Position numbers and translations under genes: made by a program. Below, piece after piece: positions 32,578-64,000 of a DNA stretch of 64,000 nt. Within the stretch, counting starts at the first letter, position 1. Each line of letters begins with the position of its first letter. The stretch spans positions 310,001 through 374,000 of the forward strand of contig NIVC01000110.1 of NCBI GenBank assembly GCA_002269645.1. The letters run 5' to 3'. Source of the DNA: Macrostomum lignano (Eukaryota). The notes beneath the pieces are model-generated. The model was given only the letters and a program-made list of their open reading frames with translations. It did not search any database and had not been told where the DNA came from.

Positions 32578-32609
<32 letters not shown>

Positions 32610-42210: not shown

Positions 42211-42296
42211 GTAAGCTATTCTAGAAGGTATATTTTGTCTTTGCACGTAGTAAAGAGATGTCGCTAACGTCTTGACGAATAACTTTCCCTATCCAG

Positions 42297-44817: not shown

Positions 44818-47800
44818 ATGGCTCACCGAGTGTTTGCTGAGCGCTGCCTCATCTGCAGCCGCCCAGGCGCCTCAATCCGGTGCCTGGAGGCCGGCTGCGG
44901 CTTCCAACTGATCTGCGAGTCCTGCCACATCAACTGGCACAGCGTTGAGAATCACCGAGTCGAGGTGCTGCCGCCGCCGCCTCAGGCCCAGCGTCGCTGC
45001 GACACCTGGCTGACCGAGCGACTCCAGGAAGTGAAGCAGCTCAGGGAGTTCAAGGACTTCTCTGATACTGACCTCATTGACTCAATCCAGTCTTGCGAGA
45101 AGGCCTGTGATGATGTGGTAGCTCTGTTAGCGCACTTGAGAAGCCAGTGTTGCAAGTGCTCAAAGCAGATGCCGCGTCACAAGCTGTTTCACATGGCGAC
45201 GTGCGAGTGCGAGCTGTGCTGTGGCTGTTTCTGCAGCTTCCTGTCCGGAATGCCGGGGCAGCTGGAGTGTCCGGTGTGTGGAGTGGCCTGGTCTGGAGAC
45301 CATGTAGCTCGAAACACGACTATGATTCTTGTGTACGAGCTGGAGTCTCAGCTAGGTAATGATGAGGCGGCGAGACTACTGCAGATGTTGGAGCAGCAAC
45401 AGAGCGACCAGCACCAGAGAGAGGAACAGGAGAGAGAAGAACAGCTGAGAGAACAGCTGAGAGACCAGCTGAGAGAGCAACAGGAGAAAGAAGAACAGCT
45501 GAGAGAACAGCTGAGAGACCAGCTGAGAGAGCAACAGGAGAGAGAAGAACAGCTGAGAGACCAGCTGAAAGAGCAACAGGCGAGAGAAGAACAGCTGAGA
45601 GACCAGCTGAGAGAGCAACAGGAGAGAGAAGAACAGCTGAGAGACCAGCTGAAAGAACAGCTGAGAGACCAGCTGAGAGAGCAACAGGAGAGAGAAGAAC
45701 AGCTGAGAGACCAGCTGAGAGAGCAACAGGAGAGAGAAGAACAGCTGAGAGACCAGCTGAGAGAGCAACAGGAGAGAGAAGAACAGCTGAGAAACCAGCT
45801 GAGAGAGCAACAGCAGAGAGAGCAACAGCAGAGAGAGCAGCAGCAGAGAGAGCAGCAGCAGAGAGAGCAGCAGCAGAGAGAGAAGCAGCAAAGAGAGCAG
45901 CAGCAGAAAGAGCAACAGCAGCAGCAGCAGCAGCGGAGAGAGCAACGGAAGAGAGAGCAGCAGCAGAGAGAGCAGCAGAATTCGTTCTTAGACCTGAAAG
46001 TGCGAGGTCAATTTCAAGGTCAAGATAAAGCAAATGATCTTTATGAGCAGCAGAGACAGTATCTCAATAATCTTCAGAAGCAGCAGAGAAATCCACAACA
46101 GGTTGCACTGCAGAGAGAGCAACAGCAGAGAGAGCAACTTGAGAGAGAGCAGCAGCAGAGAGAGCAACAGCAGAGAGAGCAACTTGAGAGAGAGCGACAG
46201 CTGAGAGAGCAACAGCTGAGAGAGCAACAGCAGAGAGAGCAACAGTTGAGAGAACAACAGCAGAGAGAGCAACTTGAGAGAGAGCAGCAGCAGAGAGAGC
46301 AACAGCAGAGAGAGCAACTTGAGAGAGAGCGACAGCTGAGAGAGCAACAGCTGAGAGAGCAACAGCAGAGAGAGCAACTTGAGAGAGAGCAGCAGCAGAG
46401 AGAGCAACAGCAGAGAGAGCAGCAGCAGAGAGAGCAGCAGCAGAGAGAGCAGCAGCAGAGAGAGCAACAGCAAAGAGAGCAACAGCAGAGAGAGCAACGT
46501 GAGAGAGAACAAAAGCAGAGAGAGCAGCAGAAAGAACAGAATCGGCAACTACATGGGCATCATACAACTAATGTTCCTTCAAAAGAAACTTCTCAAAATT
46601 TCCAAGAAAACAATTTTCAAAGCAACGGCAGCTGGGTCTGCATGCACTGCACGCTGGTGAACCCGGCTCCGTCGCAGCCAGGCGCTGGGCTTAGGATTTG
46701 CTCTGCTTGCTCACAGACTACCGAACTCAGTGGCGGCGCCACTAAAGGAGGCGCAGTCGCTCGCAATGAAGCCGTTGCTGCTGCGTCCATGCTGACCTCC
46801 GCAGCCACAGCAGCCGCCAGTGATGCAGTCGGAGCGGTAGGAAGCGATTCCAGCACAGGCTTTATTGAATGGTCCGATAGAACTCAAAACCTGGCTTCGC
46901 AGCTCAGAGTAGAAGACTGGGTTGCAGAGAGAATTCTGGCTGTCAAAAGTATGCCCAAGTTTAACGAGTTTTCCGAATCAGACCTTGTAGTTGCGATTGA
47001 GTCGTGTGGCGGCCTTGCGTTCGAAGACGACGCTCTGATGAGCCAACTGCGTCGCAAGTGCAGCCGCTGTTCGAATGAGTTGCCACGTCACAAACTTGTT
47101 GCAATGGCAGCATGCGAGTGTCAGATGTGTCCAGAGTGTTTTCGAAAATTTCTTCTTAGACTGGAAAGCAGCAGGATTCAGTGCCCTGTCTGCCATTGTG
47201 TGTGCGATGATGAGGACAGTCGGGATTTTATGACTTTGCAGCTGATGGAAATGGCGGATGTGCTTGGCACTGACACTGTGGAGTATGCAGTGGCGCACAT
47301 TAAAGTCCTTGTGCTGGGAGGTGTTTCAAAAAAAAGTGATGATGAAGATTGGGTAAAGGTCGACGCTCAAGGTAAGAAAGGGAAAAACTCAAAAGCCTCC
47401 AAAGATGCCTCGACAGTTCCAGTAAACACTTCGAATGGTTATTGTCCTCATAGGAATGGTGGACTACCGAAAAGGGACACTCGACAGTGCGAAAGTTACT
47501 GCAAAGTTTGCAAACAGGATGTCTGCAAGAAATGTTTCGGCTTCTGGGTTGATCACCAACGGATGGACTGCAGCAGTTATCGGGATTATGCAGCAGGTAT
47601 TCAACAAAAAGGAGATTATAACGAAATGCACATAGCTGCTCAAAAGCAAGGCTTCTCGCCTACTGACGCAAACCTGCACGATCAGATGATGGAGCTTCTG
47701 ACTTTTGATTTGGTTTGCCCAGTCTGCAGTCATTGCTACCAACAAGTGTCCAAATCAGGAAGCCTTGTGTTTCACTGCAGATGTGGGCATTCATTCTGTC

Positions 47801-48309
47801 CATTTTGCCGAAGCCCTCAGATGAGACCTCACGACGTCTGCCCGATTAAGGGACTTCATGTGCACCACCATCGCCAGTGCTACTTTAATTTGAAGCAAGT
47901 AAAACAGACGACTCTACTCGGTTTGCTGAAGAGAAATAAGGTAAAAGTGAACGAAACATGCTCAAAGTTTGGCAAAGCGTGTCAGCTTCCTGATTTGAAG
48001 ATAGAACGAAAGTTGATTGGTGTATATCCTTGTACCGAAAAAGTTACTCATAAAAAACGAGGTATATGTGACAGGCACTACCGTGAGTATCTAATTCAGC
48101 TCATCAATGCGCACAAGCTCGATTTGGTAGATGTTGCCAATGAGAATGAGCTGCTGGAGATGTTCAAAAGGTTTGATTTGGCCCCACCGCAAGTCAAAGC
48201 CTCCAACCCTGCTTCTGCTGCGAGAGAGAAGATGAGAGTTTACCGCGAACGGCTGAAGGACATGGTGCCACCGCTGTTGGGTAGCAAAGAGAAAGAAGCT
48301 TTGGTGTAA
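44818..48309 (+). CDS. H4: catalytically inactive HOIP-like paralogue (B-box, extra UBA-like/RING1 module, Q/E/R coiled repeats, NZF, RING1-IBR-RING2*-LDD)
   Basis: The ORF is open from 44743 to 48309; the first ATG is at 44818. RING2 reads SKSGSLVFHC where HOIP has ARGGCMHFHC. LDD reads GICDRHYREYLIQLINAHKLD. Confidence 0.87.
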   Translation: MAHRVFAERCLICSRPGASIRCLEAGCGFQLICESCHINWHSVENHRVEVLPPPPQAQRRCDTWLTERLQEVKQLREFKDFSDTDLIDSIQSCEKACDDVVALLAHLRSQCCKCSKQMPRHKLFHMATCECELCCGCFCSFLSGMPGQLECPVCGVAWSGDHVARNTTMILVYELESQLGNDEAARLLQMLEQQQSDQHQREEQEREEQLREQLRDQLREQQEKEEQLREQLRDQLREQQEREEQLRDQLKEQQAREEQLRDQLREQQEREEQLRDQLKEQLRDQLREQQEREEQLRDQLREQQEREEQLRDQLREQQEREEQLRNQLREQQQREQQQREQQQREQQQREQQQREKQQREQQQKEQQQQQQQRREQRKREQQQREQQNSFLDLKVRGQFQGQDKANDLYEQQRQYLNNLQKQQRNPQQVALQREQQQREQLEREQQQREQQQREQLERERQLREQQLREQQQREQQLREQQQREQLEREQQQREQQQREQLERERQLREQQLREQQQREQLEREQQQREQQQREQQQREQQQREQQQREQQQREQQQREQREREQKQREQQKEQNRQLHGHHTTNVPSKETSQNFQENNFQSNGSWVCMHCTLVNPAPSQPGAGLRICSACSQTTELSGGATKGGAVARNEAVAAASMLTSAATAAASDAVGAVGSDSSTGFIEWSDRTQNLASQLRVEDWVAERILAVKSMPKFNEFSESDLVVAIESCGGLAFEDDALMSQLRRKCSRCSNELPRHKLVAMAACECQMCPECFRKFLLRLESSRIQCPVCHCVCDDEDSRDFMTLQLMEMADVLGTDTVEYAVAHIKVLVLGGVSKKSDDEDWVKVDAQGKKGKNSKASKDASTVPVNTSNGYCPHRNGGLPKRDTRQCESYCKVCKQDVCKKCFGFWVDHQRMDCSSYRDYAAGIQQKGDYNEMHIAAQKQGFSPTDANLHDQMMELLTFDLVCPVCSHCYQQVSKSGSLVFHCRCGHSFCPFCRSPQMRPHDVCPIKGLHVHHHRQCYFNLKQVKQTTLLGLLKRNKVKVNETCSKFGKACQLPDLKIERKLIGVYPCTEKVTHKKRGICDRHYREYLIQLINAHKLDLVDVANENELLEMFKRFDLAPPQVKASNPASAAREKMRVYRERLKDMVPPLLGSKEKEALV
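45410..46530 (+). repeat. Coding Q/E/R-rich tandem repeats in H4 (42-bp EREEQLRDQLREQQ and 15-bp REQQQ units)
   Basis: Directly visible; the frame is preserved. Confidence 0.93.
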
Positions 48310-50353
48310 ATGTAGAACGTTGATGAACTAAACAGTTAGTCGAGCTATTCGTTCCTCCGCGGCTTTAACGTTGGATTTTAAACTGCCATGTTACAAAATC
48401 TAAAATTCGTATTTTGAGTATATGTTCAAATTATTGTTTTAAAATGTGTCTTATTTTTAGTTAAAACAACATGTATTTTCCTGATTTTTGTGAGAAGTCT
48501 GGTAAGTTTTTTATGTTCAATAACTTCTGACTTTTTATTTTATGCAAGTGATGAATGGTTTTTGGTTAATGGTTTTTTACTATTTTCTCCGTTTGTAGAC
48601 TTTAATTTTCATACTGTCGTTTACTTTTGTAATCGATATGTGGTGATGTAGGTCTCTCGAGGAAGTATTTTGATTACACTACCGTAGGCAAAGCATGCGT
48701 GTGTTTTATTGTATGAGTCACTTTACTCCCTCTGGGACAGCTTTGTGCACTCTGTGTACGAGTACTTTGCGTGCGTTTTATCTGCCCCTTCCTCTAGCCA
48801 GGGGCCTTTCACCCCGTCTTCGCTGTATGGGCGAGGGCCGAGGGGCGGGCGTCACTTGCGGCCGAATTTTTGTCTTAATTAAAAAATATTTTCTTGTAAG
48901 TTTCAGCGCACAATGCATTCTAGCTGCTCAAGCACTAAGAGCATTGTCAGAGACAAGTTTCGACAAGTAGATAAAAGCCACTTGCCAAAGTGAGCAGTGT
49001 AGGCAGAAACTGCTTGCTAGAAAGAAATCAAAGAAAGCACGTGTAAAAAGCATCGTTTAGTATTTTTATTATATATTTCCATTTTGTATTTGTTTCTCGT
49101 TGTTTTGATGTCCTTTCTTTTTTGTGTCGCACGACATTTGCAGGTACACAGTTAATTACATTTGAGTCAATTGACTGCGGAGACAATTAGTTGATTTTAA
49201 GCTTGTTCTATGAAATATGGCAGTAAAATGAATTAGCTTAAACAAGCAATCAATTGATGCTCAATCGATTTGTAGTGTATTTTGAAATCTTTCAATCGTC
49301 ACTACACGCAGTTGTTTGTAGGAAATTTTCGTGACACTATTTTTCGACTGCTAGTAAATAAAGTTTTCTTAAGTGTGTTCGTCAAAAGAGGTAAAGTGTT
49401 GTTTACACTGACATCAAATCAAATAAAGGTCCAATTTCGTGTGGTTACGCTCGTAACTCCTACAGCAGCTTTCATTCCTTTTTACATCGATAGTGCGACT
49501 TGATTGCTCATTCTATGACAATGTTAATCAGCCTTAATGATTTTAGTATTAAATTCTTGATTTGTTTAAAGTTTTTTTCAATATCCAATTTGTCTAGAAT
49601 TAGAATTATGTCTTCGCCTTCATAACAGAACGTTTTTCCAGTTACTGTTTTATCGCTCAAGTACACTCAGCAGAATGTTAAAGTTTCCACCTTGAGTGTG
49701 TACCAAGTATACCGGTATGCTCACTGTCTATACGTTTTTAAAAAGTTTCCAAACTAGGCCAATCAAATTTATTGTCCAATTATTTTTATCCAAGTTCATA
49801 TCTTTCTACAATCATTGATTTTTTTCATGTCAACAGCGGTATTTTTAACAAGATGGCTTAAAATATTTTTATAAAATATACTATTCAGATTTAAATTGCC
49901 TTCGCATTGCACTGCGAGTCTCAAATCGTTTTTTTCTTTATAAATTTTACATAGTAAAGTTTACGAAAATATTTAGATAATGGTAGAGGCCACTGGTACT
50001 ACTACGAGCTGCTAAATCACTATATATTCCACTCGCTATTGAATTAGATAGCAGCAGAAAAAGCTAAGCTTGCTACTGAAAAAGGTAAACATGGGGCGCA
50101 TTTTTAGCTGAAAAAGTATCTATAATCTAATAGAATCTACGATTATATTTAATGAGTATGATAGTACGAGTATATAGCAAGATTATATTAAATTGCAATG
50201 ATGTTTTTGAGTTGCTTAAACTTTTAGACATTTTTAATTGAATGCTTTTCGACGTATTATTAAACTGATTACCTTTTCAATTCAAAGTTAGCTAAGTTTT
50301 GTTTAAATGAACTCATTGCAGCAAAGGTTTGCAAGCTTGCAGCACCAAATCGT

Positions 50354-52267
50354 ATGGCATCAGCTAGCCAAAACATTGAGTGGCAGTGCCAGCACTGCAC
50401 ATTTATCAACTCGGCAATGTGCGACACTTCCAATCCTAAAAGTCGCATCATCTGCAGCGTGTGTTCCAAGTCAGTCTCTTGTCGGGAGCTTCTGGATCTG
50501 CACCAGCGACAGCAGAGAGCACAGCATCTTAAACGGGCACCCAAGCCAAAGCCTCTTAAAAATCAACATCACAGGCAAAGCTTTGACGATGCATCCTGTG
50601 ATTCGTGGAGTTTACGAGACCCCGAAACGGATACAGCGGCCGAACCTTTCAGAGACATGTTTCAGCGATTTTCGAGGACCCGGATGAGCGAGACAAGCAG
50701 CTCCTCGGGTCTCCGAAGACGCATAGGAGAAGAGCAGGACCGAGGTGCTGTAGAAGCGGATGACATTTTCACTAGGAGTTTGGAGCCATTTCACCCTACT
50801 CACGGTGTTACTCAAGGTATGCTGCAGTGGGATCAAATTCGGCCAGTTCAAAAGTCGTCGCTCAGAGCAATTTCTGTTCGAAACTCCAAAGCATCTCCAA
50901 TGGAAACTACTGTTAGCAAAGAGTGCCCGGTGTGCATCAACAACAAGAAGCTGGTCCAAGTTCCGCTGTGCGGCTGCGAGGTCTGCAGCGACTGTCTGTG
51001 CCAGCAGATCGAGGTGCGCCTGATGCACGACAGCTCGGTGTCGGTGCTGACGTGTCCGGTGTGCGACAAGCTGGACGACCGAGCTCTGACGGACACGTCG
51101 TGCGAGTACTTTCCGCTGCTGCAGAGGTTGCTGGCGGGCCAGCTGAAGCCCGCAGTGATGAAGAAGCTTGATGAGAGACTGCGCGACTGGCGACTGAAGC
51201 TGACGGACAACTTCTGCTGGTGCAGCGGGTGCTCGAACGGTTTCGAGGTGTCGGAGCACCACGACAGGCAGGTGCGGTGCCCGCACTGCGGCAAGGAGAC
51301 GTGCAGGAAGTGCGGCAAGGCGTGGCACGAGCGGCACCGAGGCGTGAGCTGCCAGCAGTTCGGCGAGTGGCGTCAGCAGACGGACTTGAGCGAGCGCGGA
51401 CTGGCGCAGTTCCTGGAGAGTCGGGGCAGCTCGTGTCCAAAGTGCGGCTTCCAGTTCGAGCTGTCTCGAGGCGGCTGTCTTCACCTGACGTGCAGGCAGT
51501 GCAAGGCGGAGTTCTGCAGCGACTGCGGCAGTCTGTTTGTTCGACAGGAGTGCTGCGGCGGGAACAAGGGACTCCACTGCCACCACGGGTCGGAGTGCGT
51601 GGAGACGTTCAGAGACTGGCCGTTGGAGAAGGTTCGGCAGGCGGCGCTGGAGCGGGGCGTTCAGCTGGAGCTTGTCGGAGTGGCGGGCGCTGGAGGTCGG
51701 TGCAGCGTCCAGGAGCAGAAGGAGACGTCAGGAGGCGGTCTGGAGGACGGGGAGTGCGGGAGGCCGGTGGTGGAGGCGGGTCTGTGCGAGTCGCACCTCA
51801 AGGAGGCCCTGGCCAGCGCCATGCGTGGCAACAAGAAGAAGGACCGTGTAGGTGCGCCGGACTTTCTGGCTGGCCCTATGAGCAGTAAGGTGGGCAAAGC
51901 GCAGCGACCTACATCTGGGCCTCTAGTGGCACCATCGAAATCTTTGAACCCGGGTCTCACCCAGCGTCCCATGCGACTGGATTTTTTTTCGTCAAACAAT
52001 AAACCGAAGCTTAATTTTAATCGTCGCGATTTGTCACCCACATTGTCGGAGATTTCAACTTCAGTTGACTTTGCCTGCCCGCATTGCACCGCCGTGTCTC
52101 CAACTGCGCCCAGCGTATCCAATGGTTCGCGTGTTCTTTGCACTGTGTGCGGCAAAACCACACCTTCGAAGGGTGGATCGGGTGCAGATGGCGCTTTCAG
52201 TGGCTCGGATTCGATGTTTAACTCTTATGATGTTGATTTTGAAAGCTGTCTAGATATTTGGGATTGA
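50354..52267 (+). CDS. H5: HOIP-like RBR ligase paralogue (NZF, RING1-IBR-RING2-LDD variant, NZF-like), 637 aa
   Basis: Motifs WQCQHCTFIN, GGCLHLTC, LHCHHGSEC and a C-terminal FACPHC...VLCTVC. Confidence 0.87.
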   Translation: MASASQNIEWQCQHCTFINSAMCDTSNPKSRIICSVCSKSVSCRELLDLHQRQQRAQHLKRAPKPKPLKNQHHRQSFDDASCDSWSLRDPETDTAAEPFRDMFQRFSRTRMSETSSSSGLRRRIGEEQDRGAVEADDIFTRSLEPFHPTHGVTQGMLQWDQIRPVQKSSLRAISVRNSKASPMETTVSKECPVCINNKKLVQVPLCGCEVCSDCLCQQIEVRLMHDSSVSVLTCPVCDKLDDRALTDTSCEYFPLLQRLLAGQLKPAVMKKLDERLRDWRLKLTDNFCWCSGCSNGFEVSEHHDRQVRCPHCGKETCRKCGKAWHERHRGVSCQQFGEWRQQTDLSERGLAQFLESRGSSCPKCGFQFELSRGGCLHLTCRQCKAEFCSDCGSLFVRQECCGGNKGLHCHHGSECVETFRDWPLEKVRQAALERGVQLELVGVAGAGGRCSVQEQKETSGGGLEDGECGRPVVEAGLCESHLKEALASAMRGNKKKDRVGAPDFLAGPMSSKVGKAQRPTSGPLVAPSKSLNPGLTQRPMRLDFFSSNNKPKLNFNRRDLSPTLSEISTSVDFACPHCTAVSPTAPSVSNGSRVLCTVCGKTTPSKGGSGADGAFSGSDSMFNSYDVDFESCLDIWD

Positions 52268-55025: not shown

Positions 55026-56627
55026 ATGGATTGCGTCAACTGGGAGTGCAAGATTTGCACTTTTAACAACGAGTTTGTCGCCTTCTGCCTGCCAGTCAGC
55101 GAAGGACGCATCTTCTGCAAAGTTTGCGAATCCTGTCACGGCTTGAAGGAAATTGTGACTGATGTAAACCAGCGCACTGGTCAATACCTGTGCATCAGGT
55201 GCACTCTTCTCAACCCAAGAAGCCGCCACTATTGCTCCGCCTGCGGTTCTTGGCTGCTTTTTGTGTCAGAGTCGCCGCCTGAATCAGAGCAGCTGCAGTC
55301 TGAGCTGTCCTTCCTAAGCTTAACATCTCGGTCACTCAGTGATGTTGATGAGGACAATGAAAATAACGAAGAGATGATAGACTTGATGTTAAGATTCAGT
55401 TTCACTAAACTGGAACACTCGGCTAACTTTATTAAGCTTCGCGAACAGCCAGAGTTCCGGAATTTCGATCCAAACGATTTGGCCGAAGCTGTTCGCAGTT
55501 GCGGAGACCAGCTTGACTACGTGGACTTTGTGAGTGCGTACTTCAAGAACGAGTGTCCCATCTGTTTTGATAGCTTTCCCAGGCACAAAGTTCTTCAGAT
55601 GGCCTCCTGCCAGTGCAAGTTGTGCTTCAGCTGCTTCCGGAACTTTGTGACCGCCAGTCTGGACAACAACGATCATGTGTCTCATCTTCAGTGTCCGATC
55701 TGTAACACACCGGACTCTGAGAACGAAGCGGAGCTGGAGAACTATTTTGAGTATCTGCTAATTCAGGTGAAAAGCTTTCAGCATGCTGAGATCAGGTTCG
55801 AAGCTGACAAGATCAACATGCTCGAGCAGAGGCTTCGCGATTGGAACCTGATGCGGGACCCGAATTTCCGGTGGTGCAGCCACTGTCCAAATGGAGTTGT
55901 ACTGAGTGAGCAGATGCGGGGTCTGAAGTTCCAGTGCAACCAGTGCTCAAAGTACACGTGCAAGCAGTGCCGCAAGCAGTGGCGAGAGCAGCACGAGAAA
56001 ATCAGCTGCGAGCAGTTCCAGCAGTGGCTGGTGGAGAATGATCCGGACTACCAAGCGAAGGGAGTGGCAGCGTTTCTAGAAAACAACGGCATCGAGTGTC
56101 CGAAGTGCAAGTTCAAATACGCTCTGGCGAAGGGCGGGTGCATGCACTTCACCTGCCGGCCGCCGTGCCGGGCAGAGTTTTGCTCAGGTTGCGGCGGCTT
56201 TTTCAAAAGACTGCACGGTCGAGGTCTCGTCTGCGAGCATCCGAGAGACTGTCTGTTCTACCTGAGAGACTTTACTGTGCGAAGTCTTCAGAAGCTGCTC
56301 AGCGACCACGGGGTTCAGTACGAGACGGCTGCAGAAGGCGCCGCTTCTGGCACCTGCGATGTGATGGAGCAGAAAGAGAGTGGCAATCTGGTTGACGAAG
56401 CTTGCGGCAGACCCGTTGAGGGTCACGCAAAACTGTGCGGCAAGCACTACAAAGAGTACCTTGTATCGCTGATCAACAAGAATCGCTTGGATCCAGTTGA
56501 GGTGATGGACGTTGAGCAGTTGAAGGAAACTTGCAGAAGGCATAAAATTGAGGTTCAGAATAGTATTTCCACAGATTCGACAGCTTTGCGTGCACTGATC
56601 GTGCGCCAAGTTCCGCTTCGGTCTTAA
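55026..56627 (+). CDS. H6: compact canonical HOIP-like ligase (2 NZF, UBA-like linker, RING1-IBR-RING2-LDD), 533 aa
   Basis: YALAKGGCMHFTC, HPRDCLFYLRDF and LCGKHYKEYLVSLINKNRLDP. Closest to H1, but lacks PUB and B-box. Confidence 0.9.
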   Translation: MDCVNWECKICTFNNEFVAFCLPVSEGRIFCKVCESCHGLKEIVTDVNQRTGQYLCIRCTLLNPRSRHYCSACGSWLLFVSESPPESEQLQSELSFLSLTSRSLSDVDEDNENNEEMIDLMLRFSFTKLEHSANFIKLREQPEFRNFDPNDLAEAVRSCGDQLDYVDFVSAYFKNECPICFDSFPRHKVLQMASCQCKLCFSCFRNFVTASLDNNDHVSHLQCPICNTPDSENEAELENYFEYLLIQVKSFQHAEIRFEADKINMLEQRLRDWNLMRDPNFRWCSHCPNGVVLSEQMRGLKFQCNQCSKYTCKQCRKQWREQHEKISCEQFQQWLVENDPDYQAKGVAAFLENNGIECPKCKFKYALAKGGCMHFTCRPPCRAEFCSGCGGFFKRLHGRGLVCEHPRDCLFYLRDFTVRSLQKLLSDHGVQYETAAEGAASGTCDVMEQKESGNLVDEACGRPVEGHAKLCGKHYKEYLVSLINKNRLDPVEVMDVEQLKETCRRHKIEVQNSISTDSTALRALIVRQVPLRS

Positions 56628-57483: not shown

Positions 57484-57837
57484 GTGTGCACCCTGGCGCA
57501 CTTTAAGCGACATTGTCACACAACCGGCGAGAGGCATTGCTGCCCATTCCCCCGACTTCCCTGAGCAGGCACACAAGCGCGCGGATACGTACGCAGTCAT
57601 ACGCACAGGCACACACTCACACAGGAGTGTACAGCGGCGCTAACTTTATTTATCGTTAGGCATGTACACTTCACTGTGCCTTGGGTTTAGGCCTTAAGGG
57701 CGTTAATTTCACGAGTAGAGCCAAGCCTAGATTCCAATTTAGTCCCAGATTAATTTAGATTACTGCTGACTGCAATTGGAATAGAACCTGGGCCGCTGGA
57801 ATATCAAAGCGCCGCGCTGGACCACTGGGCTACGTCC
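57484..57837 (-). mobile_element. tRNA-derived SINE family A, copy 3
   Basis: The reverse complement starts GGACGTAGCCCAGTGG (A box) and contains GGTTCTATTCC (B box); body shared with copies 1 and 2. Confidence 0.83.
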
Positions 57838-57895
57838 TCTTTTTTATCAGATATTCTGATTTAAAAATTCTAGGTGTGTCGCCTAGTAGGGGGGA

Positions 57896-58197
57896 TGTAG
57901 CCTACTGGAAGTGGTTCAAGCGTCGGGCTAATGACTTGAAGGTCGGGGATTCGATTCTCGACCCACTCGAAACAATTTGTGTCCTTGATTGAGCAAGACA
58001 CTTAACTCTGCATTGCTTCAGTTCACCTAGGTGTAAAATGGGTGCCAGCATTAGCTCGGGTAATTGAAGGTTGGGTGTGGCGACCCCCCCCCCCCAGTCC
58101 TTAGACTGAACAGCCGTACGCAGTCTTCAGATGCGCGGTGCAATAGCTGCGGCTGAGCTGTCGCCTGTCGGTTGCACATCTGGCCCAATTGAGGCAT
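57896..58197 (+). mobile_element. tRNA-derived SINE family B (CORE-like), copy 2
   Basis: GTGTCCTTGA...GCAAGACACTTAACTCT...TGTAAAATGGG resembles the MIR/CORE domain; 3' body shared with B1 and B3. Confidence 0.8.
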
Positions 58198-58295
58198 GTG
58201 TTATCATTTTTTTATTACGAGCTATTATTATTGAAGAAAGTATTTTATATTTTCTCCAGCTGACCACTCTCGCCGCCCAGTTCCACTTGCTCTCC

Positions 58296-58610
58296 ATGAC
58301 GTCATCAATAGTAGACTGCAGTTTCTGCGGCGACAATCCAGCCGCAGTCTACTGCAGTACGCCCACCTGCAGCCGCAACATTCTGTGCCGCAGCTGCGAC
58401 TCGCTCTGGCACGGACACCCTAATCGTAGAAATCACGTGACCGAACCTTATCATCAGCAGCAGTCTGGCCTTGCAATTGCTCCGTCTAGCACTGAAGTTT
58501 CATCGCGCAGATTTTTTAACATCGAATTCTGGATTTTTTATGGTCCAGCAGTTCTGCTCTTTGCATTGCTGTTGCTAAACTTGTGCGGCAGAGCTGATAC
58601 TCCGTCTTGA
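58296..58610 (+). CDS. B-box-only micro-ORF (104 aa) with a C-terminal hydrophobic segment; truncated paralogue of the H7 5' end
   Basis: CSFCGDNPAAVYC...LCRSCDSLWHGHPNRRNH matches the H7 and H1 B-box. It ends FWIFYGPAVLLFALLLLNLC...*. Confidence 0.6.
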   Translation: MTSSIVDCSFCGDNPAAVYCSTPTCSRNILCRSCDSLWHGHPNRRNHVTEPYHQQQSGLAIAPSSTEVSSRRFFNIEFWIFYGPAVLLFALLLLNLCGRADTPS

Positions 58611-60861
58611 TGCCAGATCAACTGGTTGATGCTTCATTTGTCACGGAAAATGTTGAATCCTCTTCATAGATTTCCGGATGGCTGAGAAAGTTGTAAACCA
58701 GCCGTCTGATGCGGCTTCGAATTGTCCTTATGGATTAATTCTGTTATACTGCATCTATTGGACTCGACCTGATGTGATGAAAGCTGGTCGTTGATCGCAG
58801 CCTGAAAAAGGAAATCAATATTTGATTGTAACTTTTTGATTATCAATCTGTTTAGACGATTTTAACAGTTGATCAATAGATCAATAAATTAAAATAGACT
58901 GTAATAGACTGATGATACTACACTCATGGTAAAAGTACAAATACGAGGGTTGTTCTGTGGCTGACTGTGATATTCGAATTTGATGCAACTTGCGTCATAA
59001 GTAGAAAAGGATCAAACGGTTGTTTTGATTTTTAATGGGGTAAAAATGCCAATTCATTCAAAATTTATGCCTATGGTTAGAGCGAGGGGTAGAGGGTGGA
59101 GTTTCACCAAGTCGAGCATACTATGCTGACCATAGACTAAACTTTTGATGTTTAGTCAGAAGCACAGAATACACCAGAATGCTCAATCAGCTTCCAAATC
59201 GAAAGCCGAAATATAAAACCATAGTCACTACTCCTGAGGTGAATAAGAGATAAGTAGTACTGAAATTTGAGAAGTAGTCACCTTTTTGTACGTCCATTCG
59301 AGGGGGAACATTTTTATGGACAGAAGGTCCCGACTGTATATTTGCAGCTGTAGCGACATGAAAATGTAGATATTAATTGTGAACATTAAACGCAAACTAG
59401 AACAGTTTAAAAACAGCAGTATGAGCAGCAGTTTAGGCAATTGGGTACGTGATATAGCCGTACGTGAAAATTTAGCATGAAAATTGCAAACTGGAACAGT
59501 TTAAAAAGAGCAGTATGAGCAGCAGTTTAAGCCTCAAACATGCCCACTTGTGCTCGTTGGCTTTGCCAAGCAGGTCGGCTCTGTAGATTCGGCGCGCCCA
59601 TTCTTCGCATCTGCATGAAACAGTTATTATGGCATGCCTGTCAAAAGCGACTACAATAACTACTCGTAAGATATCATATCATAATACTGATGTCACGTAC
59701 CTTTCAGGACTCTTGATTGGAAACTTATGAAAACGAACTCCAGGTTGATTTCTATACGCATAAGATTTACAGCCGTATGATGCGCACTGCCGACGTGAAA
59801 CTGTTAGCATGGCGCAACAGAGGCGTGAAAATGAGAATCACGGGACACTTACAATTAAATAAAGTAGCTGTCAGCCAAACGACTTTAATTAACATTGGAC
59901 CATCGATTTATTTGGAGCGGCCAAAAGGGGTATAAATCTAAGGAACGCAGGCAACTAAGCTGAGTTATTGTACACTAGGCATCCAATAGATAGGATAGAT
60001 GGACAGAAAGACAAGCGAAAAACATCGTCTATGGCAAAATCGATCTCAATACACTCGGGTTGATGAAAGAAGCCAGCACTACTCACAAATCACTTCACCT
60101 TAGAAGTAGCGTAGCTAGCAAGCTAGCAAATAGTTTTTGCCTCAACTTTTTTTCTCAGGGAGCTTGAATGAGCATTCTGGTGTATTCTGTGGTCAGAACC
60201 ATCGATTTGAAAAAGAAGAAGCTGAAGAGAAACAAAAGAGCACATAAGCCCTCGAAAAAAGCAGAAGCTAATCTGAAGCAGAAGCAAGCAGAACAGCTGC
60301 AGGCTGCAGGCTGAGGGGTGACTTCGTCGAAAAGTCATCAGTCAAGGGCGATGGCGATGCTACGTGACCGACTTTGCGGACCCCTCGACTTGGTGTAACT
60401 CTGCCCCCTACCCCTTGTTCTAATTGTAGGCATAACTTTTGAATGAATTCGCATTTTATCCCCATTTAAAAAGCAAAACAACCGTTGGATTTTTTTCTAC
60501 TTATGACGCAATTTGCATCAAATTCGAATATCACAGTCAGCCTCTGTACCGGTTTTTCCCGCTATTTCTGGGACAGCCCTCGTAGATGTCACAAACGTGC
60601 TTTCTATTTGCTTACTGTTGCCATAGTTTGCGATCAATGTACTGAGTATGTGCTGAATATGTTAAATAAATGTGCGTATTTAATGAGATTCTTTTATGTA
60701 ACGTAACAAACGGATGTTGGCTTGAAATGATTTTGAGATTTTCAATAGTTTAACTCCAACAGGCACCAGTAAATGTAGTTTTTTAGCTTCGACTTAAGAG
60801 TACAAGCATTAAAGTAGAAATATGTACCAAATTATTTTGTCGTAATAATAAATTAGTCAAG

Positions 60862-61150
60862 GGAAGTTGTAGCCTAGTGGTTAGAGCGTCGGACGCACGA
60901 GATAAAGGTCGGGGGTTCGATTCTCGACCTACTCGGGGGGGCGGGAATTTGTGTCCTTGAGCAAGAAACTTAACTCTGCATTGCTTCAGTTCACCCAGCT
61001 GTAAAATGGGTGCCAGCATTAGCTGGGGTAATTTAGGGTGTGTGGCGACCCCCCCGTCCTTGGACTGAACAGCCGTACGCAGCCTTCAGATGCCCCGGGC
61101 AGTAGCTGCGGCTGAGCTGTCGGTTGCACATCTGGCCCATTGGGGCAGGT
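60862..61150 (+). mobile_element. tRNA-derived SINE family B (CORE-like), copy 3
   Basis: TAGCCTAGTGG, GGTTCGATTCT and a CORE-like block; shared 3' body. Confidence 0.83.
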
Positions 61151-61375
61151 TTAATCAAATATTAGTTTTTTATTGTTCTGAGGTGTTGTTTTGTGAGATT
61201 CTATAATAATTTCAAATAGTAACGACAGTAAAAAAAGTTCATCAAGGCTCACGGTTTACAACTTTCGAACGAGGTTCCATCTGGTTCTAGATAGCAGAGT
61301 CCCGATTATTTAGGACAACTTTTTTTAGGTCAATCAAATATTAACCAAGCAGTCAATACTCCCACAGAGCGCAGT

Positions 61376-64000
61376 ATGGCTACAGTAGACTGTAGCTTTT
61401 GTGGCGATTACCCAGCCGAAGTGCAGTGCGAAACAGCCGGCTGCAGCCGGAATCTGCTGTGCAAAAGCTGCGACCAGATTTGGCACAACCATCCGAATCG
61501 GAAAAATCACCAGACCAGACCCTACCAGCCCGGGTCGGCCGCTGGTCCTTCACGATCTCCCCAGTCAGGCCGCACGCCGCCGAAACGACCGCCACCGCCT
61601 CAACCAACATCTCCGCCACCTGCTTCTAGCAGCAGCGGTGGCTGGCAGTGCCAATTCTGCACTTTCATCAACGAGGATTCTACGCGAAGGATATGCAGCG
61701 TTTGTGGCAAGAGTGATGGAACACCTCCGATTGAGTTTAAGGAAGCCAGTCCTCCTGCAGGTAGCAACAACAATCGGTCAAATTCTGGCACAGGTGTTGC
61801 TAAACCGACAGTACCTGGTGGTTCCGCTCAGTCTGCTTCTTATTCGTCAGCTGTTTTGCCTAGCGAGTCTGATAGAGGATCGAGCGGAACATTCGATTCT
61901 CGGGCACCGGCTCACCAGAAGCCTGACAATGCTGCTCACAGTGTTGGCCGTACAGATACTAATGATAGTGACCTAGCTTTTGGAAGCAATAAGAATGCGC
62001 ACCAGAATTCATTTTTGGACGTAAAAAATCAGCAAGGTCAATTTCAAGGTCAAGATAAAGCAAATGATCTTTATGAGCAGCAGAGACAGTATCTAAATAA
62101 TCTTCAGCAGCAGCAGAGAAATCCACAACAGGATGAACAGCAGAGAGAGCAACAGCAGAGAGAGCAGCAGCAGAGAGAGCAACAGAAGAGAGAGCAGCAG
62201 CAGAGAGAGCAACAGCAGAGAGAGCAACAAAAGAGAGAGCAGCAGCAGAGAGAGCAGCAGCAGAGAGAGCAGCAGCAGAGAGAGCAACAGCAGAGAGAGC
62301 AACAGCAGAGAGAGCAACAGCAGAGAGAGCAGCAGCAGAGAGCGCAGCAGCAGAGAGAGCAACAGCAGAGAGAGCAACAGAAGAGAGAGCAGCAGCAGAG
62401 AGCGCAGCAGCAGAGAGAGCAACAGCAGAGAGAGCAACAGAAGAGAGAGCAGCAGCAGAGAGAGCAACAGCAGAGAGAGCAACAGAAGAGAGAGCAGCAG
62501 CAGAGAGAGCAACAGCAGAGAGAGCAACAAAAGAGAGAGCAGCAGCAGAGAGAGCAGCAGCAGAGAGAGCAGCAGCAGAGAGAGCAACAGCAGAGAGAGC
62601 AACAACAGAGAGAGCAGAATCGGCAACTACATGAACATCCTGCAACTAATTTTCCGTCAAAAGTAGCCTCTCAAAATTTCCAAGAAAAAAATTCTCAAAG
62701 CAGCTGGGTCTGCAAGCACTGCACGCTGCTCAACCCGGCTCCATCGCAGCCAGAAACTGGGCTTAGGATTTGCTCTGCTTGCGCACACACTACCGAACTC
62801 AGTGGTGGCGCCACTAAAAGAGGCGCAGTCGCTCGCAGTGAAGCCGCTTCTGCTGCGTCCATGCTGGCCTCCGCAGCCACAGAAGCCGCCAGTGATGCAG
62901 TCGGAGCGGCAGGAAGCGAGTCCAGCACAGGTTTTACCGAATGGTCCGATAGAGCTCAAAACCTGGCTTCGCAGCTCAGAGTGGAAGACTGGGTAGCAGA
63001 GAGAGTTCTGGCTGTCAAAAGCATGCCCAAGTTTAACGAGTTTTCCGAATCAGACCTTGTAGTTGCGATTGAGTCGTGTGGCGGCCTGGCGTTCGAAGAC
63101 GATGCTCTGATGAGCCAACTGCGTCGCAAGTGCAGCCGCTGTTCGAATGATTTACCGCGTCACAAACTTGTTGCCATGGCAGCATGCGAGTGCCAGATGT
63201 GTCCAGAGTGTTTTCGAAAATTTCTTCTTGAGCTGAAAAGCAGCAGAATTCAGTGCCCTGTCTGCAAGGATGTGTGCGATGATGAAGACAGTCGGGATTT
63301 CATGAGGATGCAGCTGATGGAAATGGCGGATGTGCTTGGCGCTGACGCTGTGGCGTATGCATTGGCGCGCCTTGAAGATAATTCAAGCAAAAATAGCGAC
63401 GAAGGTTGGGAAGTGGTCGAAGCTCCAGGCAAGAGAGGGAAAAAATCAAAAGCCTCAAAAGATGCCTCGACAGTTCCAGTAAACATTTCGAATGGCTATT
63501 GTCCTCATAGGAATGGTGGACTACCGAAAAGAGACACTCGGCAGTTCGAAAGTCACTGCAAAGTTTGTAAGCAGGATGTATGCAAGAAATGCTTTGGCTT
63601 CTGGACTGATCACCAACGGATGGACTGCAGCAGTTATCGGGTTCATGCAGCAGGTATTAAAAAAGGAGATTATAACAAAATGCACATAGCTGCTCAAAAG
63701 CAAGGCCTCTCGCCTACTGACGCAAACCTGCACGATCAGATGATGGAGCATCTGACTTTTGATTTGGTTTGCCCAGACTGCAGTCTTTGCTACCAGCGAG
63801 TGTCCAAATCTGGAGTTCCTGTGTTTCACTGCAGATGTGGGCATTCATTCTGTCCATTTTGTCGAAGCCCTCAGTTGAGACCTCACGAAGGCTGCCAAAT
63901 TAAAGGAATTCATGTGCACCACCAGCGCCAGTGCTACTTTTATTTGAAGCAAGTAAAACAGACGACTCTACTTGATTTGTTGAGGAGAAATAAGATTAAA
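61376..64000 (+). CDS. H7 (partial, runs off the window): catalytically inactive HOIP-like paralogue (B-box, NZF, REQQQ repeats, NZF, RING1-IBR-RING2*-LDD)
   Basis: It is absent from the ORF track because it has no stop. The frame starting at ATG 61376 stays in register at my spot checks (62003, 62615, 62705, 63815, 63962). RING2 reads SKSGVPVFHC. It is similar to H4 from about 62000 onward. Confidence 0.86.
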   Translation, partial: MATVDCSFCGDYPAEVQCETAGCSRNLLCKSCDQIWHNHPNRKNHQTRPYQPGSAAGPSRSPQSGRTPPKRPPPPQPTSPPPASSSSGGWQCQFCTFINEDSTRRICSVCGKSDGTPPIEFKEASPPAGSNNNRSNSGTGVAKPTVPGGSAQSASYSSAVLPSESDRGSSGTFDSRAPAHQKPDNAAHSVGRTDTNDSDLAFGSNKNAHQNSFLDVKNQQGQFQGQDKANDLYEQQRQYLNNLQQQQRNPQQDEQQREQQQREQQQREQQKREQQQREQQQREQQKREQQQREQQQREQQQREQQQREQQQREQQQREQQQRAQQQREQQQREQQKREQQQRAQQQREQQQREQQKREQQQREQQQREQQKREQQQREQQQREQQKREQQQREQQQREQQQREQQQREQQQREQNRQLHEHPATNFPSKVASQNFQEKNSQSSWVCKHCTLLNPAPSQPETGLRICSACAHTTELSGGATKRGAVARSEAASAASMLASAATEAASDAVGAAGSESSTGFTEWSDRAQNLASQLRVEDWVAERVLAVKSMPKFNEFSESDLVVAIESCGGLAFEDDALMSQLRRKCSRCSNDLPRHKLVAMAACECQMCPECFRKFLLELKSSRIQCPVCKDVCDDEDSRDFMRMQLMEMADVLGADAVAYALARLEDNSSKNSDEGWEVVEAPGKRGKKSKASKDASTVPVNISNGYCPHRNGGLPKRDTRQFESHCKVCKQDVCKKCFGFWTDHQRMDCSSYRVHAAGIKKGDYNKMHIAAQKQGLSPTDANLHDQMMEHLTFDLVCPDCSLCYQRVSKSGVPVFHCRCGHSFCPFCRSPQLRPHEGCQIKGIHVHHQRQCYFYLKQVKQTTLLDLLRRNKIK
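62130..62612 (+). repeat. Coding 15-bp repeat (REQQQ) in H7
   Basis: Directly visible. Confidence 0.96.

What the first reader, a model, noticed from the sequence alone, without database searches (positions are those of the whole stretch)
47755..63825. Two intact pseudo-ligases: catalytic Cys and His lost, zinc ligands and reading frames kept
At the HOIP Cys885/His887 positions H4 has Ser/Val (AGC at 47761, GTG at 47767) and H7 has Val/Val (GTT at 63815, GTG at 63821). Surrounding zinc ligands, the LDD helix and >2.6-kb frames are preserved. The former Cys codon has drifted between the two copies while structural residues have not, which argues for selection on a non-catalytic role such as dominant-negative regulator, allosteric partner (HOIL-1/SHARPIN-like) or decoy for pathogen effectors.
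Basis: partly seen in the sequence, partly recalled or inferred. Interest (0 to 1): 0.8.

Follow-up and report, generated by a model that had tools for sequence, protein, structure and literature searches.

The report
Catalytically dead HOIP-like ligase paralogs, flatworm
In a tandem array of HOIP/RNF31-like ubiquitin-ligase genes of the flatworm Macrostomum lignano, two genes (and their copies on two other contigs) have lost every catalytic residue yet stay intact, transcribed and under purifying selection, so they are most likely non-catalytic "pseudo-ligases" rather than decaying pseudogenes.

Summary
H4 (44818-48309) has AGC/GTG (Ser/Val) and H7 (61376 to beyond the window) has GTT/GTG (Val/Val) at the HOIP Cys885/His887 positions.

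The window is Macrostomum lignano contig NIVC01000110.1. It holds an intronless tandem array of HOIP-like RBR-LDD genes. H1, H2, H3, H5 and H6 keep GGC[LM]H.

In H4/H7 the third triad residue (Gln896 to Ser) and the acceptor-ubiquitin contacts (Arg935/Asp936 to Lys/Gln) are also changed. Nearly all family-invariant zinc ligands, RING1 and the LDD remain.

Copies on two further contigs give six H4/H7-type sequences.
- Pairwise dN/dS is 0.43-0.61, with every bootstrap interval below 1.
- Structured domains are more constrained than linkers.
- No premature stops are seen against 13-21 expected under random substitution, and all indels are in frame.
- Four copies carry transcript-derived gene models.
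- A seventh copy is visibly broken, which shows what decay looks like here.

The ex-catalytic codon is the most variable codon in the structured region (Ser, Val, Tyr).

Selection for a non-catalytic role is supported. Loss of activity and the actual role (ubiquitin-binding adaptor, regulator or decoy) are inferred, not shown. I rate it a new variant of a known kind (pseudo-E3).

The parts
44818..48309 (+). H4: complete single-exon ORF (1163 aa) of the pseudo-ligase subfamily
   Evidence: ORF and translation. It has no gene model of its own, because a chimeric H3/H5 model spans it.
44845..44955 (+). H4 N-terminal B-box-like zinc finger
   Evidence: Cys/His pattern. The equivalent H7 segment gives a weak Pfam ANCHR-like B-box hit, E=9e-4, below the gathering score.
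45148..45285 (+). H4 extra N-terminal RING1-like finger (absent from H7; resembles the N-terminus of downstream gene H9)
   Evidence: C-x2-C...C-x-C-x2-C-x2-C...C-x2-C pattern.
45394..46548 (+). H4 Q/E/R-rich 15-nt-period repeat arrays (two blocks, 45394-45987 and 46105-46548); length varies between copies
   Evidence: Translations.
46630..46716 (+). H4 NZF-like (RanBP-type) zinc finger
   Evidence: Weak Pfam Zn_ribbon_RanBP hit, 17.9 bits, below the cut-off.
46864..47193 (+). H4 pre-RING1 helices plus RING1; all eight zinc ligands kept; the most constrained part (pN/pS 0.31-0.35)
   Evidence: Foldseek matches HOIP RING1 (7v8f, TMt 0.61). The E2-contact Val701 is Arg.
47440..47571 (+). H4 degenerate IBR (second ligand shifted to His)
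   Evidence: Alignment. No Pfam IBR hit.
47710..47880 (+). H4 RING2 without catalytic residues
   Evidence: phmmer to HOIP RING2-LDD. No Pfam IBR_1 hit.
47761..47769 (+). H4 ex-active-site codons AGC CTT GTG (Ser-Leu-Val in place of Cys885-Met886-His887)
47881..48174 (+). H4 LDD (linear-chain determining domain), with Arg935/Asp936 replaced by Lys/Gln
   Evidence: Pfam PF18091, E=3e-11, 43.7 bits against a cut-off of 23. Foldseek to HOIP RING2-LDD, TMt 0.75-0.79. Alignment.
61376..64000 (+). H7: ORF cut by the window end. On the contig it continues 369 nt to a stop (998 aa). GenBank model BOX15_Mlig004413g2.
61391..61711 (+). H7 B-box-like zinc finger (61391-61510) and first NZF-like finger (61643-61711)
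62132..62626 (+). H7 Q/E/R repeat array
62702..62788 (+). H7 second NZF-like finger
62936..63265 (+). H7 pre-RING1 helices plus RING1
63497..63628 (+). H7 degenerate IBR
63764..63934 (+). H7 RING2 without catalytic residues
63815..63823 (+). H7 ex-active-site codons GTT CCT GTG (Val-Pro-Val)
31666..35226 (+). H1: full-length HOIP-like paralog with intact GGCLHF (context and control)
   Evidence: Pfam IBR, IBR_1, LDD and UBA_HOIP hits. 269.8 bits to the HOIP RBR-LDD chain 5edv.
55026..56627 (+). H6: short HOIP-like paralog with intact GGCMHF (context and control)

Best explanation
H4 and H7 belong to a Macrostomum-lineage subfamily of HOIP/RNF31-derived RING1-IBR-RING2-LDD proteins. This subfamily lost the RING2 active site before H4 and H7 split and before the cluster was multiplied onto three contigs.

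Without Cys885, His887 and Gln896 they cannot take ubiquitin from an E2 as a thioester, so they should not build chains. This step is inferred.

They are nevertheless kept as intact, transcribed genes under purifying selection. Selection is strongest on the pre-RING1/RING1 module and the LDD core. This step is shown.

My best guess at the mechanism, also inferred, is a non-catalytic ubiquitin-system adaptor or regulator.
- The NZF finger(s) and the retained RING2-LDD ubiquitin-docking scaffold bind ubiquitin or ubiquitin chains without transferring ubiquitin. The Lys/Gln replacements for Arg935/Asp936 are conservative and invariant.
- The long Q/E/R helix acts as a spacer.
- RING1 serves as a protein-binding module.
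- The result is competition with, or scaffolding of, the catalytically competent paralogs encoded next door (H1, H2, H3, H5, H6).
For: Loss of catalytic residues:
- Alignment to solved HOIP structures.
- The 23-sequence family alignment, where all invariant zinc ligands are kept but GGCxH, Gln896 and Arg935/Asp936 are changed only in this clade.
- 135 of 149 family representatives keep GGCxHxxC.

Established roles of these residues:
- Cys885 is the thioester site and His887 the general base (PMC5135002).
- HOIP C885S gave no detectable oxyester intermediate, and C885A was used as the inactivating RING2 mutant in the NF-kB assays (PMC3463842).
- Arg935/Asp936 contact the acceptor ubiquitin, and their Ala mutants abolish activity (PMC7125101).

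Fold kept:
- Pfam LDD hit above the gathering score.
- The AlphaFold2 model has RING2-LDD pLDDT of about 70-92. Foldseek's top hits are HOIP RBR (E=2.7e-18) and HOIP RING2-LDD (TMt 0.75-0.79).

Selection:
- Six copies on three contigs.
- dN/dS of 0.43-0.61 with all intervals below 1.
- pN/pS by domain: 0.31-0.39 in pre-RING1, RING1 and LDD against 0.74-0.88 in linkers and tail.
- 12.6-20.6 stops expected, 0 seen, P<1/5000; all roughly 12 indels are in frame.
- A seventh copy (L009 about 6998-8729) carries at least 3 frameshifts and at least 2 stops, so decay does happen in this family.
- Catalytic neighbours evolve at a comparable rate, dN/dS 0.26-0.48.

Expression:
- The annotation is derived only from RNA-seq (PMC5730564).
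- It holds models for H7, for the H7 copies on the other two contigs (full-length single exons of 1011 and 984 aa) and for the H4 copy on NIVC01000691.1 (976 aa).
Against: - No biochemical data exist; inactivity is inferred.
- dN/dS near 0.5 is only moderate constraint.
- Mosaic nearest-neighbour patterns show ongoing gene conversion, for example 0 differences between the contig-762 H4 copy and H7 over about 225 nt. Copies are therefore not independent, and conversion could refresh a dead copy.
- H4 itself has no gene model of its own.
- H7's model skips 19 nt (window 63653-63671) and ends before RING2.
- The contig-762 H4 copy is preceded by an in-frame stop.
- RNA-seq reads multi-map between copies that are about 90% identical.
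- No orthologs from other species could be retrieved, so conservation is only shown within one polyploid genome.
- The RING1 E2-contact Val701 is Arg and Trp704 is Asn in all copies. This argues against simple E2 sequestration.
- A novel Cys (HOIP position 877) is conserved in all copies.
Confidence: 0.62

Rival explanations
1. H4 and H7 are young non-functional duplicates (unprocessed pseudogenes). Their frames survive only because too little time has passed, or because gene conversion keeps copying sequence between them.
For: Copies are only 8-10% diverged at the nucleotide level. Conversion tracts are evident. dN/dS is higher than for typical conserved genes. One family member is clearly decayed, and the contig-762 H4 copy has an upstream stop. 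H4 lacks its own gene model.
Against: With the observed number of substitutions, 13-21 stops are expected and none is seen. All indels are in frame. dN/dS is below 1 in all 15 pairs. Folded domains are 2-3 times more constrained than linkers. Conversion only occurs among the pseudo-ligase copies themselves, which are about 25% identical to the catalytic paralogs, so it cannot import 'healthy' sequence. The catalytic residues were lost before all seven copies diverged, yet the scaffold persisted. Transcript-based models exist.
Confidence: 0.08
2. They are still ligases that work by another route. Options are an alternative nucleophile (the clade-specific conserved Cys at HOIP position 877, or Ser885 in H4 acting through an oxyester), RING1 acting as a canonical RING, or RING2 having drifted into a canonical RNF4-like RING that activates E2~Ub directly.
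For: A new Cys is conserved in all seven copies (CS[HL]CY). The H4 RING2 region matches the RNF4 RING by phmmer (46.5 bits for the tandem construct, 28 bits for a single RING), with the same C-x2-C-x18-C-x-H-x2-C-x2-C-x10-C spacing; H1 does not match RNF4. RING1 is the most conserved domain.
Against: Four of six copies have Val at position 885, which cannot carry ubiquitin. HOIP C885S gave no detectable oxyester (PMC3463842). The general base and the third triad residue are gone too. Foldseek finds HOIP RING2-LDD and no RNF4-type RING, although the model is biased by its HOIP-rich alignment. The residue equivalent to the E2-binding hydrophobic of canonical RINGs (CP-x-C) varies V/D/N/K among copies. 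The eighth cross-brace ligand is Lys. RBR RING1 domains hold E2~Ub open rather than activating it (PMC5462532 abstract), and Val701 is Arg here.
Confidence: 0.12
3. They are non-catalytic decoys or sensors in an arms race. The ex-active-site surface is under diversifying selection because it is bound by something that normally targets the active HOIP paralogs, for example a pathogen effector or an endogenous inhibitor.
For: The former Cys codon needs at least 5 nucleotide changes among six copies. That is the maximum of 590 codons (mean 0.71), matched only by two tail columns. Changes at the 885/886 dipeptide exceed even the neutral expectation: P=0.013 for the codon, and 0.0025 and 0.0064 on the two lineages concerned. 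The flanking 20 nt are identical in all copies. States found at position 885 are Val, Ser and Tyr; at 886 they are Pro, Leu, Ser and Phe. A second hypervariable dipeptide follows RING1 (HC/KD/QG). The family is tandemly expanded and fast-evolving, as immune gene families often are. HOIP is a known effector target in mammals (PMC8944867).
Against: Two multi-nucleotide mutation events, or plain relaxation of a now useless site, could give the same picture. The sample is six recombining copies from one genome. No site-model test was possible. No pathogen or partner is known for this free-living flatworm.
Confidence: 0.1

Closest known systems
HOIP / RNF31 (catalytic subunit of LUBAC; Drosophila LUBEL), the RBR-LDD E3 ligase family
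   Same: Homologous over RING1, IBR, RING2 and LDD (phmmer E=1e-21 to 5edv; Pfam LDD hit; Foldseek TMt 0.75-0.79 on RING2-LDD). NZF-type fingers lie upstream. The zinc-ligand columns are kept.
   Different: Cys885, His887, Gln896 and Gly883 are replaced. Arg935/Asp936 become Lys/Gln. The IBR and RING2 are no longer recognised by Pfam. No PUB or UBA hit. There is a B-box-like N-terminal finger and a long Q/E/R repeat. The genes are intronless and lie in a tandem array with five catalytically intact paralogs.
Pseudo-E3s / RING pseudoligases (BARD1, TRAF2, some TRIMs; PMC13061254, bioRxiv 10.1101/2024.10.15.614675)
   Same: They are members of an E3 family that keep the fold but lack the features needed for catalysis, and are thought to act as structural or regulatory partners.
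   Different: Those are canonical RING proteins that fail to bind or activate the E2. Here an RBR (RING/HECT-hybrid) ligase has lost its thioester Cys. I found no described RBR example in the searched literature.
IBR / BRcat domain of RBR ligases
   Same: The RING2 of H4/H7 is now what an IBR is: the same zinc-ribbon scaffold as the catalytic RING2, without the active Cys.
   Different: It is still fused to an LDD and occupies the RING2 position. The resemblance is descriptive, not a shared origin.
HOIL-1/RBCK1 and SHARPIN (non-HOIP LUBAC subunits)
   Same: They are accessory proteins of the linear-ubiquitin machinery that carry NZF fingers.
   Different: HOIL-1 keeps its catalytic Cys and is active. 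Both bind HOIP through UBL-UBA contacts, and no UBL was detected in H4/H7. There is no evidence of complex formation here.
Other HOIP-like proteins lacking the Cys: M. lignano PAA67416.1/PAA73089.1 and spider Caerostris darwini GIX67345.1
   Same: RING2 aligns, with Ala (SKSTADHIAC) or Ser (GGSLLY) at position 885. The M. lignano pair also shows dN/dS 0.48.
   Different: They share at most about 36% identity with H4. The M. lignano pair keeps His887 and has lost the IBR. Whether it shares the loss with H4/H7 or lost the Cys independently is unresolved.

Membership tests
HOIP/RNF31-type RBR-LDD E3 ligase | RING1 with eight zinc ligands | tested here: met
   C7, C10, C25, (C27), C30, C33, C48 and C51 are invariant in alignment A2. 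phmmer matches HOIP RING1. Foldseek to 7v8f gives TMt 0.61.
HOIP/RNF31-type RBR-LDD E3 ligase | IBR (C6HC) domain | tested here: inconclusive
   Seven of eight ligand columns are kept and the second is shifted to His. There is no Pfam IBR hit even at E<=1. pLDDT is 59-76.
HOIP/RNF31-type RBR-LDD E3 ligase | RING2 zinc scaffold | tested here: met
   C871, C874, C890, C893, C898, C901, H925 and C930 columns are kept; the C890-C893 spacing is shortened by one residue.
HOIP/RNF31-type RBR-LDD E3 ligase | Catalytic Cys in RING2 (HOIP Cys885) | tested here: not met
   Ser in H4; Val in H7 and three other copies; Tyr in one copy.
HOIP/RNF31-type RBR-LDD E3 ligase | His887 general base and Gln/Glu896 of the triad | tested here: not met
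   Val and Ser respectively in all copies. The triad role of residue 896 is from my own knowledge of the HOIP/parkin literature and was not found in the papers read.
HOIP/RNF31-type RBR-LDD E3 ligase | LDD C-terminal domain (PF18091) with its zinc finger | tested here: met
   43.7 bits against a cut-off of 23. The C969, C986, C998 and H1001 columns are kept. Foldseek TMt 0.75-0.79.
HOIP/RNF31-type RBR-LDD E3 ligase | Acceptor-ubiquitin contacts Arg935/Asp936 | tested here: not met
   Lys/Gln in all copies. Roles are from PMC7125101.
HOIP/RNF31-type RBR-LDD E3 ligase | Forms an E3~Ub thioester and makes Met1-linked chains | not testable with these tools
   Needs biochemistry.
Pseudoenzyme / pseudo-E3 | Clear homolog of an active enzyme family with the fold retained | tested here: met
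Pseudoenzyme / pseudo-E3 | Catalytic residues missing | tested here: met
Pseudoenzyme / pseudo-E3 | Maintained by selection and expressed (not a pseudogene) | tested here: met
   dN/dS 0.43-0.61 with intervals below 1. 0 stops against 13-21 expected. Transcript-derived models for four copies. Caveats: evidence comes from within one genome, gene conversion is active, and H4 has no model of its own.
Pseudoenzyme / pseudo-E3 | Absence of activity shown experimentally | not testable with these tools
   Needs thioester, discharge and chain assays.
Pseudogene | Disabling mutations (stops, frameshifts) or dN/dS near 1 | tested here: not met
   None is found in H4, H7 or the full-length copies. Disabling mutations are present in the separate copy on L009.
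Canonical C3HC4 RING (RNF4-like) | Eight cross-brace ligands and a conserved hydrophobic E2-binding surface | tested here: not met
   The spacing matches for seven ligands, but the eighth is Lys. The CP-x-C residue varies V/D/N/K. There is no RING-fold hit for this region in Foldseek.

The most novel reading that the evidence does not exclude
The dead active site has been turned into a rapidly diversifying recognition surface. These HOIP paralogs would then be decoys or sensors for factors that attack the active LUBAC-like ligases. This would be an animal counterpart of 'integrated decoy' logic built from an RBR ligase, evolving by tandem duplication, gene conversion and diversifying selection at the former catalytic Cys.
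Probability: 0.1. Interest if true: 0.8.

Novelty: new variant of a known kind. Interest (0 to 1): 0.55.

Why it matters
Pseudo-E3s are recognised for canonical RING proteins. I found no described case of an RBR ligase, and none of the linear-chain ligase HOIP, that has naturally lost its thioester cysteine yet is kept by selection.

If confirmed, H4/H7 would be a natural experiment on what the RING1-IBR-RING2-LDD scaffold can do without catalysis: ubiquitin reading, regulation of active paralogs, or decoy function. They sit beside five catalytically intact paralogs in an organism where RNAi and transgenesis work.

The finding also shows that M. lignano has an unusually large, intronless, recombining HOIP-like gene family whose members are all 'hypothetical proteins' in GenBank.

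Tried and rejected
- The word-indexed protein search returned only one hit each time. It even missed an 83%-identical annotated paralog, so it cannot be used to claim absence in other species.
- The exhaustive HMMER search found no relative above 37% identity outside one 50%-identity cluster. Members of that cluster cannot be listed, so cross-species conservation remains untested.
- Literature searches for the gene identifiers, and for Macrostomum together with HOIP, found nothing.
- Pfam on full-length H4 and H7 gave no hit. This turned out to be a masking effect of the low-complexity repeats, because the isolated C-terminus hits the LDD model.
- I first read H4's AGC CTT as close to the ancestral TGT CTT (Cys-Leu) of H2/H3/H5. 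The seventh, more divergent copy has GTT TTT, so Val at position 885 is more likely ancestral for the clade and Ser/Tyr derived.
- Whether the second M. lignano Cys-less family (P0006) is sister to H4/H7 stays unresolved. NJ groups them on long branches, but BLAST scores do not clearly favour H4/H7 over H1.
The accepted alignment is shallow (20 sequences) and HOIP-rich, so the model cannot test a fold change independently.
- The look-up of H1's full ORF found no exact gene model.
- ARAGORN found no tRNA in the tRNA-like stretch near 60870.
- The regex survey left 11 of 149 family representatives unclassified; these are fragments or proteins without a recognisable RING2.
Full report
**1. Where the window comes from**

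The only close database match to H4's C-terminal half is a Macrostomum lignano protein. Look-ups place the window on contig NIVC01000110.1 of assembly GCA_002269645.1.

The + strand from about 31.6 kb to the window end carries seven long, intronless ORFs related to HOIP/RNF31:
- H1: 31666-35226
- H2: 36523-39491
- H3: 41101-42267
- H4: 44818-48309
- H5: 50354-52267
- H6: 55026-56627
- H7: 61376 to beyond 64000

Pfam finds IBR, IBR_1 (RING2) and the HOIP-specific C-terminal domain PF18091 (LDD) in H1, H2, H3, H5 and H6. All five have GGC[LM]H at the active site.

**2. The observation**

- H4: AGC 47761, CTT 47764, GTG 47767.
- H7: GTT 63815, CCT 63818, GTG 63821.

phmmer against solved structures aligns H4 'SKSGSLVFHC' to HOIP 'ARGGCMHFHC' at E=1.4e-17. 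These are therefore the Cys885 and His887 positions.

Cys885 is the thioester site and His887 the general base (PMC5135002). HOIP C885S gave no detectable oxyester, and C885A was the inactivating RING2 mutant in the NF-kB assays (PMC3463842).

A 23-sequence alignment shows that H4/H7 keep every family-invariant Cys/His of RING1, IBR, RING2 and the LDD zinc finger. They uniquely change several other positions:
- Gly883 to Ser.
- Gln/Glu896 to Ser.
- The HHPRD motif.
- Arg935/Asp936 to Lys/Gln. These are the acceptor-ubiquitin contacts whose Ala mutants abolish activity (PMC7125101).
- The EQKE hairpin.

Minor ligand changes are a C-x-H in the IBR and C-x-C at positions 890/893.

Among 149 representative HOIP-family proteins found by exhaustive HMMER, 135 carry GGCxHxxC. 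Only three alignable RING2 domains lack the Cys: an H4 copy, another M. lignano protein and a spider protein.

H7 runs off the window. On the contig its ORF continues 369 nt to a stop, giving 998 aa.

**3. More copies**

The cluster exists on two more contigs, as expected for this neopolyploid genome. They are NIVC01000762.1 (L003, L009) and NIVC01000691.1 (L004, L005).

This gives six H4/H7-type sequences, each with an intact region of about 575 codons from the NZF to the stop. Position 887 is Val (GTG) in all six. Positions 885/886 vary:
- AGC CTT (Ser-Leu) in H4.
- TAT TCT (Tyr-Ser) in the contig-691 H4 copy.
- GTT CCT (Val-Pro) in the other four.

The flanking nucleotides are identical in all copies.

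A seventh, more divergent copy (L009) has GTT TTT (Val-Phe). It is genuinely broken upstream, with at least three frameshifts and two stops. Its last 243 codons are nonetheless annotated as a gene.

The catalytic residues were therefore lost before all these copies diverged.

**4. Is it selected?**

- *dN/dS.* Nei-Gojobori dN/dS for H4 versus H7 is 0.55 (bootstrap 0.41-0.77). All 15 pairs give 0.43-0.61 with upper bounds of 0.93 or less.
- *By domain.* pN/pS is 0.31 (pre-RING1 helices), 0.35 (RING1), 0.39 (LDD), 0.49 (IBR) and 0.55 (RING2). Linkers and the tail give 0.74-0.88. This is the pattern of a folded, working protein.
- *Stops and indels.* Placing the observed number of substitutions at random predicts 12.6-20.6 premature stops. 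None is observed in any of 5000 simulations' worth of expectation (P<1/5000). All roughly 12 indels are in frame.
- *Comparison with neighbours.* The catalytically intact neighbours evolve at dN/dS 0.26-0.48, so the whole array is fast-evolving.
- *Caveat on independence.* Nearest-neighbour scans show a mosaic of conversion tracts between copies and contigs. The pairs are not independent. However, conversion only shuffles sequence among the Cys-less copies.

**5. Expression**

The GenBank annotation of this assembly is built solely from RNA-seq-derived transcripts (PMC5730564). It holds models for four copies:
- H7 (BOX15_Mlig004413g2).
- The two other H7 copies, as full-length single exons of 1011 and 984 aa.
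- The contig-691 H4 copy (PAA78395.1).

Weak points remain. H7's own model skips 19 nt (63653-63671) and so terminates before RING2. H4 lies inside a chimeric H3/H5 model and has no model of its own. Reads will also multi-map between copies.

**6. Fold**

The isolated H4 C-terminus hits Pfam PF18091 at 43.7 bits against a cut-off of 23.

An AlphaFold2 model of RING1 to the C-terminus has mean pLDDT 68.8, with RING2-LDD blocks at about 70-92. Foldseek matches it to HOIP RBR (E=2.7e-18) and to HOIP RING2-LDD (TMt 0.75-0.79, rmsd 3.2-3.7 Å). The model rests on a shallow, HOIP-rich alignment.

**7. What else the sequence says about mechanism**

- The RING1 hydrophobic E2 pocket of HOIP is Val701, Cys725, Ile732 and Pro745 (PMC8944867). 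In every H4/H7 copy it is Arg, Cys, Leu and Pro. Simple E2 sequestration is therefore doubtful.
- The Lys/Gln pair at positions 935/936 is a conservative replacement and is invariant. With the NZF finger(s), this fits a ubiquitin-binding, non-transferring module.
- A new Cys at HOIP position 877 is conserved in all copies. I cannot rule out a role for it.
- The H4 RING2 region also matches the RNF4 RING by sequence (46.5 bits), which H1 does not. The eighth ligand is Lys, the putative E2-contact residue varies among copies, and no RING fold is recovered.

**8. The ex-catalytic site**

Column 885 needs at least 5 nucleotide changes among six copies. This is the maximum over 590 codons (mean 0.71) and is equalled only by two unreliable tail columns.

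Against a synonymous tree length of 0.456, this exceeds the neutral expectation: P=0.013 for the codon, and 0.0025 and 0.0064 for the two lineages that changed.

The cause could be repeated multi-nucleotide mutation or diversifying selection. I cannot tell which. A second hypervariable dipeptide (HC/KD/QG) follows RING1.

**9. Verdict**

The interpretation, selection for a non-catalytic role, is supported by the tests that could be run. Inactivity and the actual role remain inferences.

Pseudo-E3s are a known concept for canonical RINGs (PMC13061254). I found no RBR/HOIP example. I therefore rate this a new variant of a known kind, of moderate interest.

Noticed in passing
window 55026-56627 versus L003 10001-11602: The H6 coding sequence is nucleotide-identical on contigs 110 and 762 (0 of 1599 differences). 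The surrounding 4.6 kb is 97% identical, and neighbouring genes show dS 0.07-0.2. This could be recent conversion, very strong constraint or assembly collapse.
   Followed up: partly
L003 2-3391; L004 904-4887: There are chimeric ORFs in the other cluster copies. In L003, an H5-like catalytic RBR-LDD is fused in frame to the Q/E/R repeat, followed by one stop and then the H4-type C-terminus. In L004, a 1328-aa ORF contains two complete catalytic RBR-LDD modules (H3-like plus H1-like) joined by repeats. The Q/E/R repeat seems to act as a recombination joint.
   Followed up: partly
L009 about 6998-8729 (NIVC01000762.1): A seventh H4/H7-type copy has at least 3 frameshifts and at least 2 in-frame stops upstream. 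Its last 243 codons (RING2 without Cys, plus LDD; Val-Phe-Val at the active site) are intact and annotated as gene BOX15_Mlig027647g1. It shares the stop before 'HHATNVPS' with the contig-762 H4 copy.
   Followed up: partly
L001 14679-17003 and 18672-21697 (2.3-9 kb beyond the window end): Two further array members (H8, H9) have a B-box-like finger, 'RERDSGQPM' repeats, NZF fingers and two RING1-like fingers, but no RING2 or LDD at all. H4's N-terminal module resembles H9's N-terminus, which points to domain shuffling.
   Followed up: no
window 31666-64000 and sister contigs: All HOIP-like genes of the array are single uninterrupted ORFs of 1.2-3.6 kb, although M. lignano genes average about 5 introns (PMC5730564). 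This suggests descent from a retroposed ancestor followed by tandem duplication.
   Followed up: no
window 47194-47199 (H4) and 63266-63271 (H7), codon columns 212-213 of the six-copy alignment: A second hypervariable dipeptide lies directly after the last RING1 CPxC, with states His-Cys, Lys-Asp and Gln-Gly. Each state is shared by one H4-type and one H7-type copy.
   Followed up: partly
window 47710-47880: The H4 RING2 region matches the RNF4 RING domain by phmmer (E=1.9e-11 for the tandem construct 4ap4, about 6e-6 for single RINGs) with identical ligand spacing. The catalytic paralog H1 does not match RNF4.
   Followed up: partly
window 63653-63671: The GenBank CDS of H7 (BOX15_Mlig004413g2) skips these 19 nt, which have no GT-AG boundaries. 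This shifts the frame, so the model ends 'ITKCT*' at 63689, before RING2. It is probably a transcript-to-genome mapping artefact or a variant transcript from another copy.
   Followed up: partly
window 41101-52267: An annotated 494-aa gene model starts at H3's ATG and ends at H5's stop, spanning the whole of H4 as an 'intron'. This is almost certainly a chimera caused by the near-identity of H3 and H5 (dS 0.055).
   Followed up: partly
window 58131-58610: A small ORF encodes a stand-alone B-box-like zinc finger of the same type as the N-termini of H7 and H8. It is annotated as 112-114 aa genes on the other contigs.
   Followed up: no
contigs NIVC01001484.1 (L006) and NIVC01001037.1 (L007): A second M. 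lignano HOIP-like cluster contains another Cys-less family (PAA67416.1/PAA73089.1). It has Ala at position 885, keeps His887, has lost the IBR, and shows dN/dS 0.48 (0.27-0.97).
   Followed up: partly
window about 38500-39480; 1-630; 19900-20480; 23000-25500; 2000-3600; 18350-19690: The window holds extensive tandem repeats: a long 'MQSMNS(MQP/PVPP)' coding repeat at the C-terminus of H2, (TCTA)n-type microsatellites, and a satellite giving 'HSFWRRR'-like pseudo-ORFs on both strands.
   Followed up: no
window about 60870-60930: A tRNA-like stretch (GTAGCCTAGTGGTTAGAGCG...GGTTCGATTC) lies upstream of H7 and is probably a tRNA-derived SINE. ARAGORN calls no tRNA there.
   Followed up: partly
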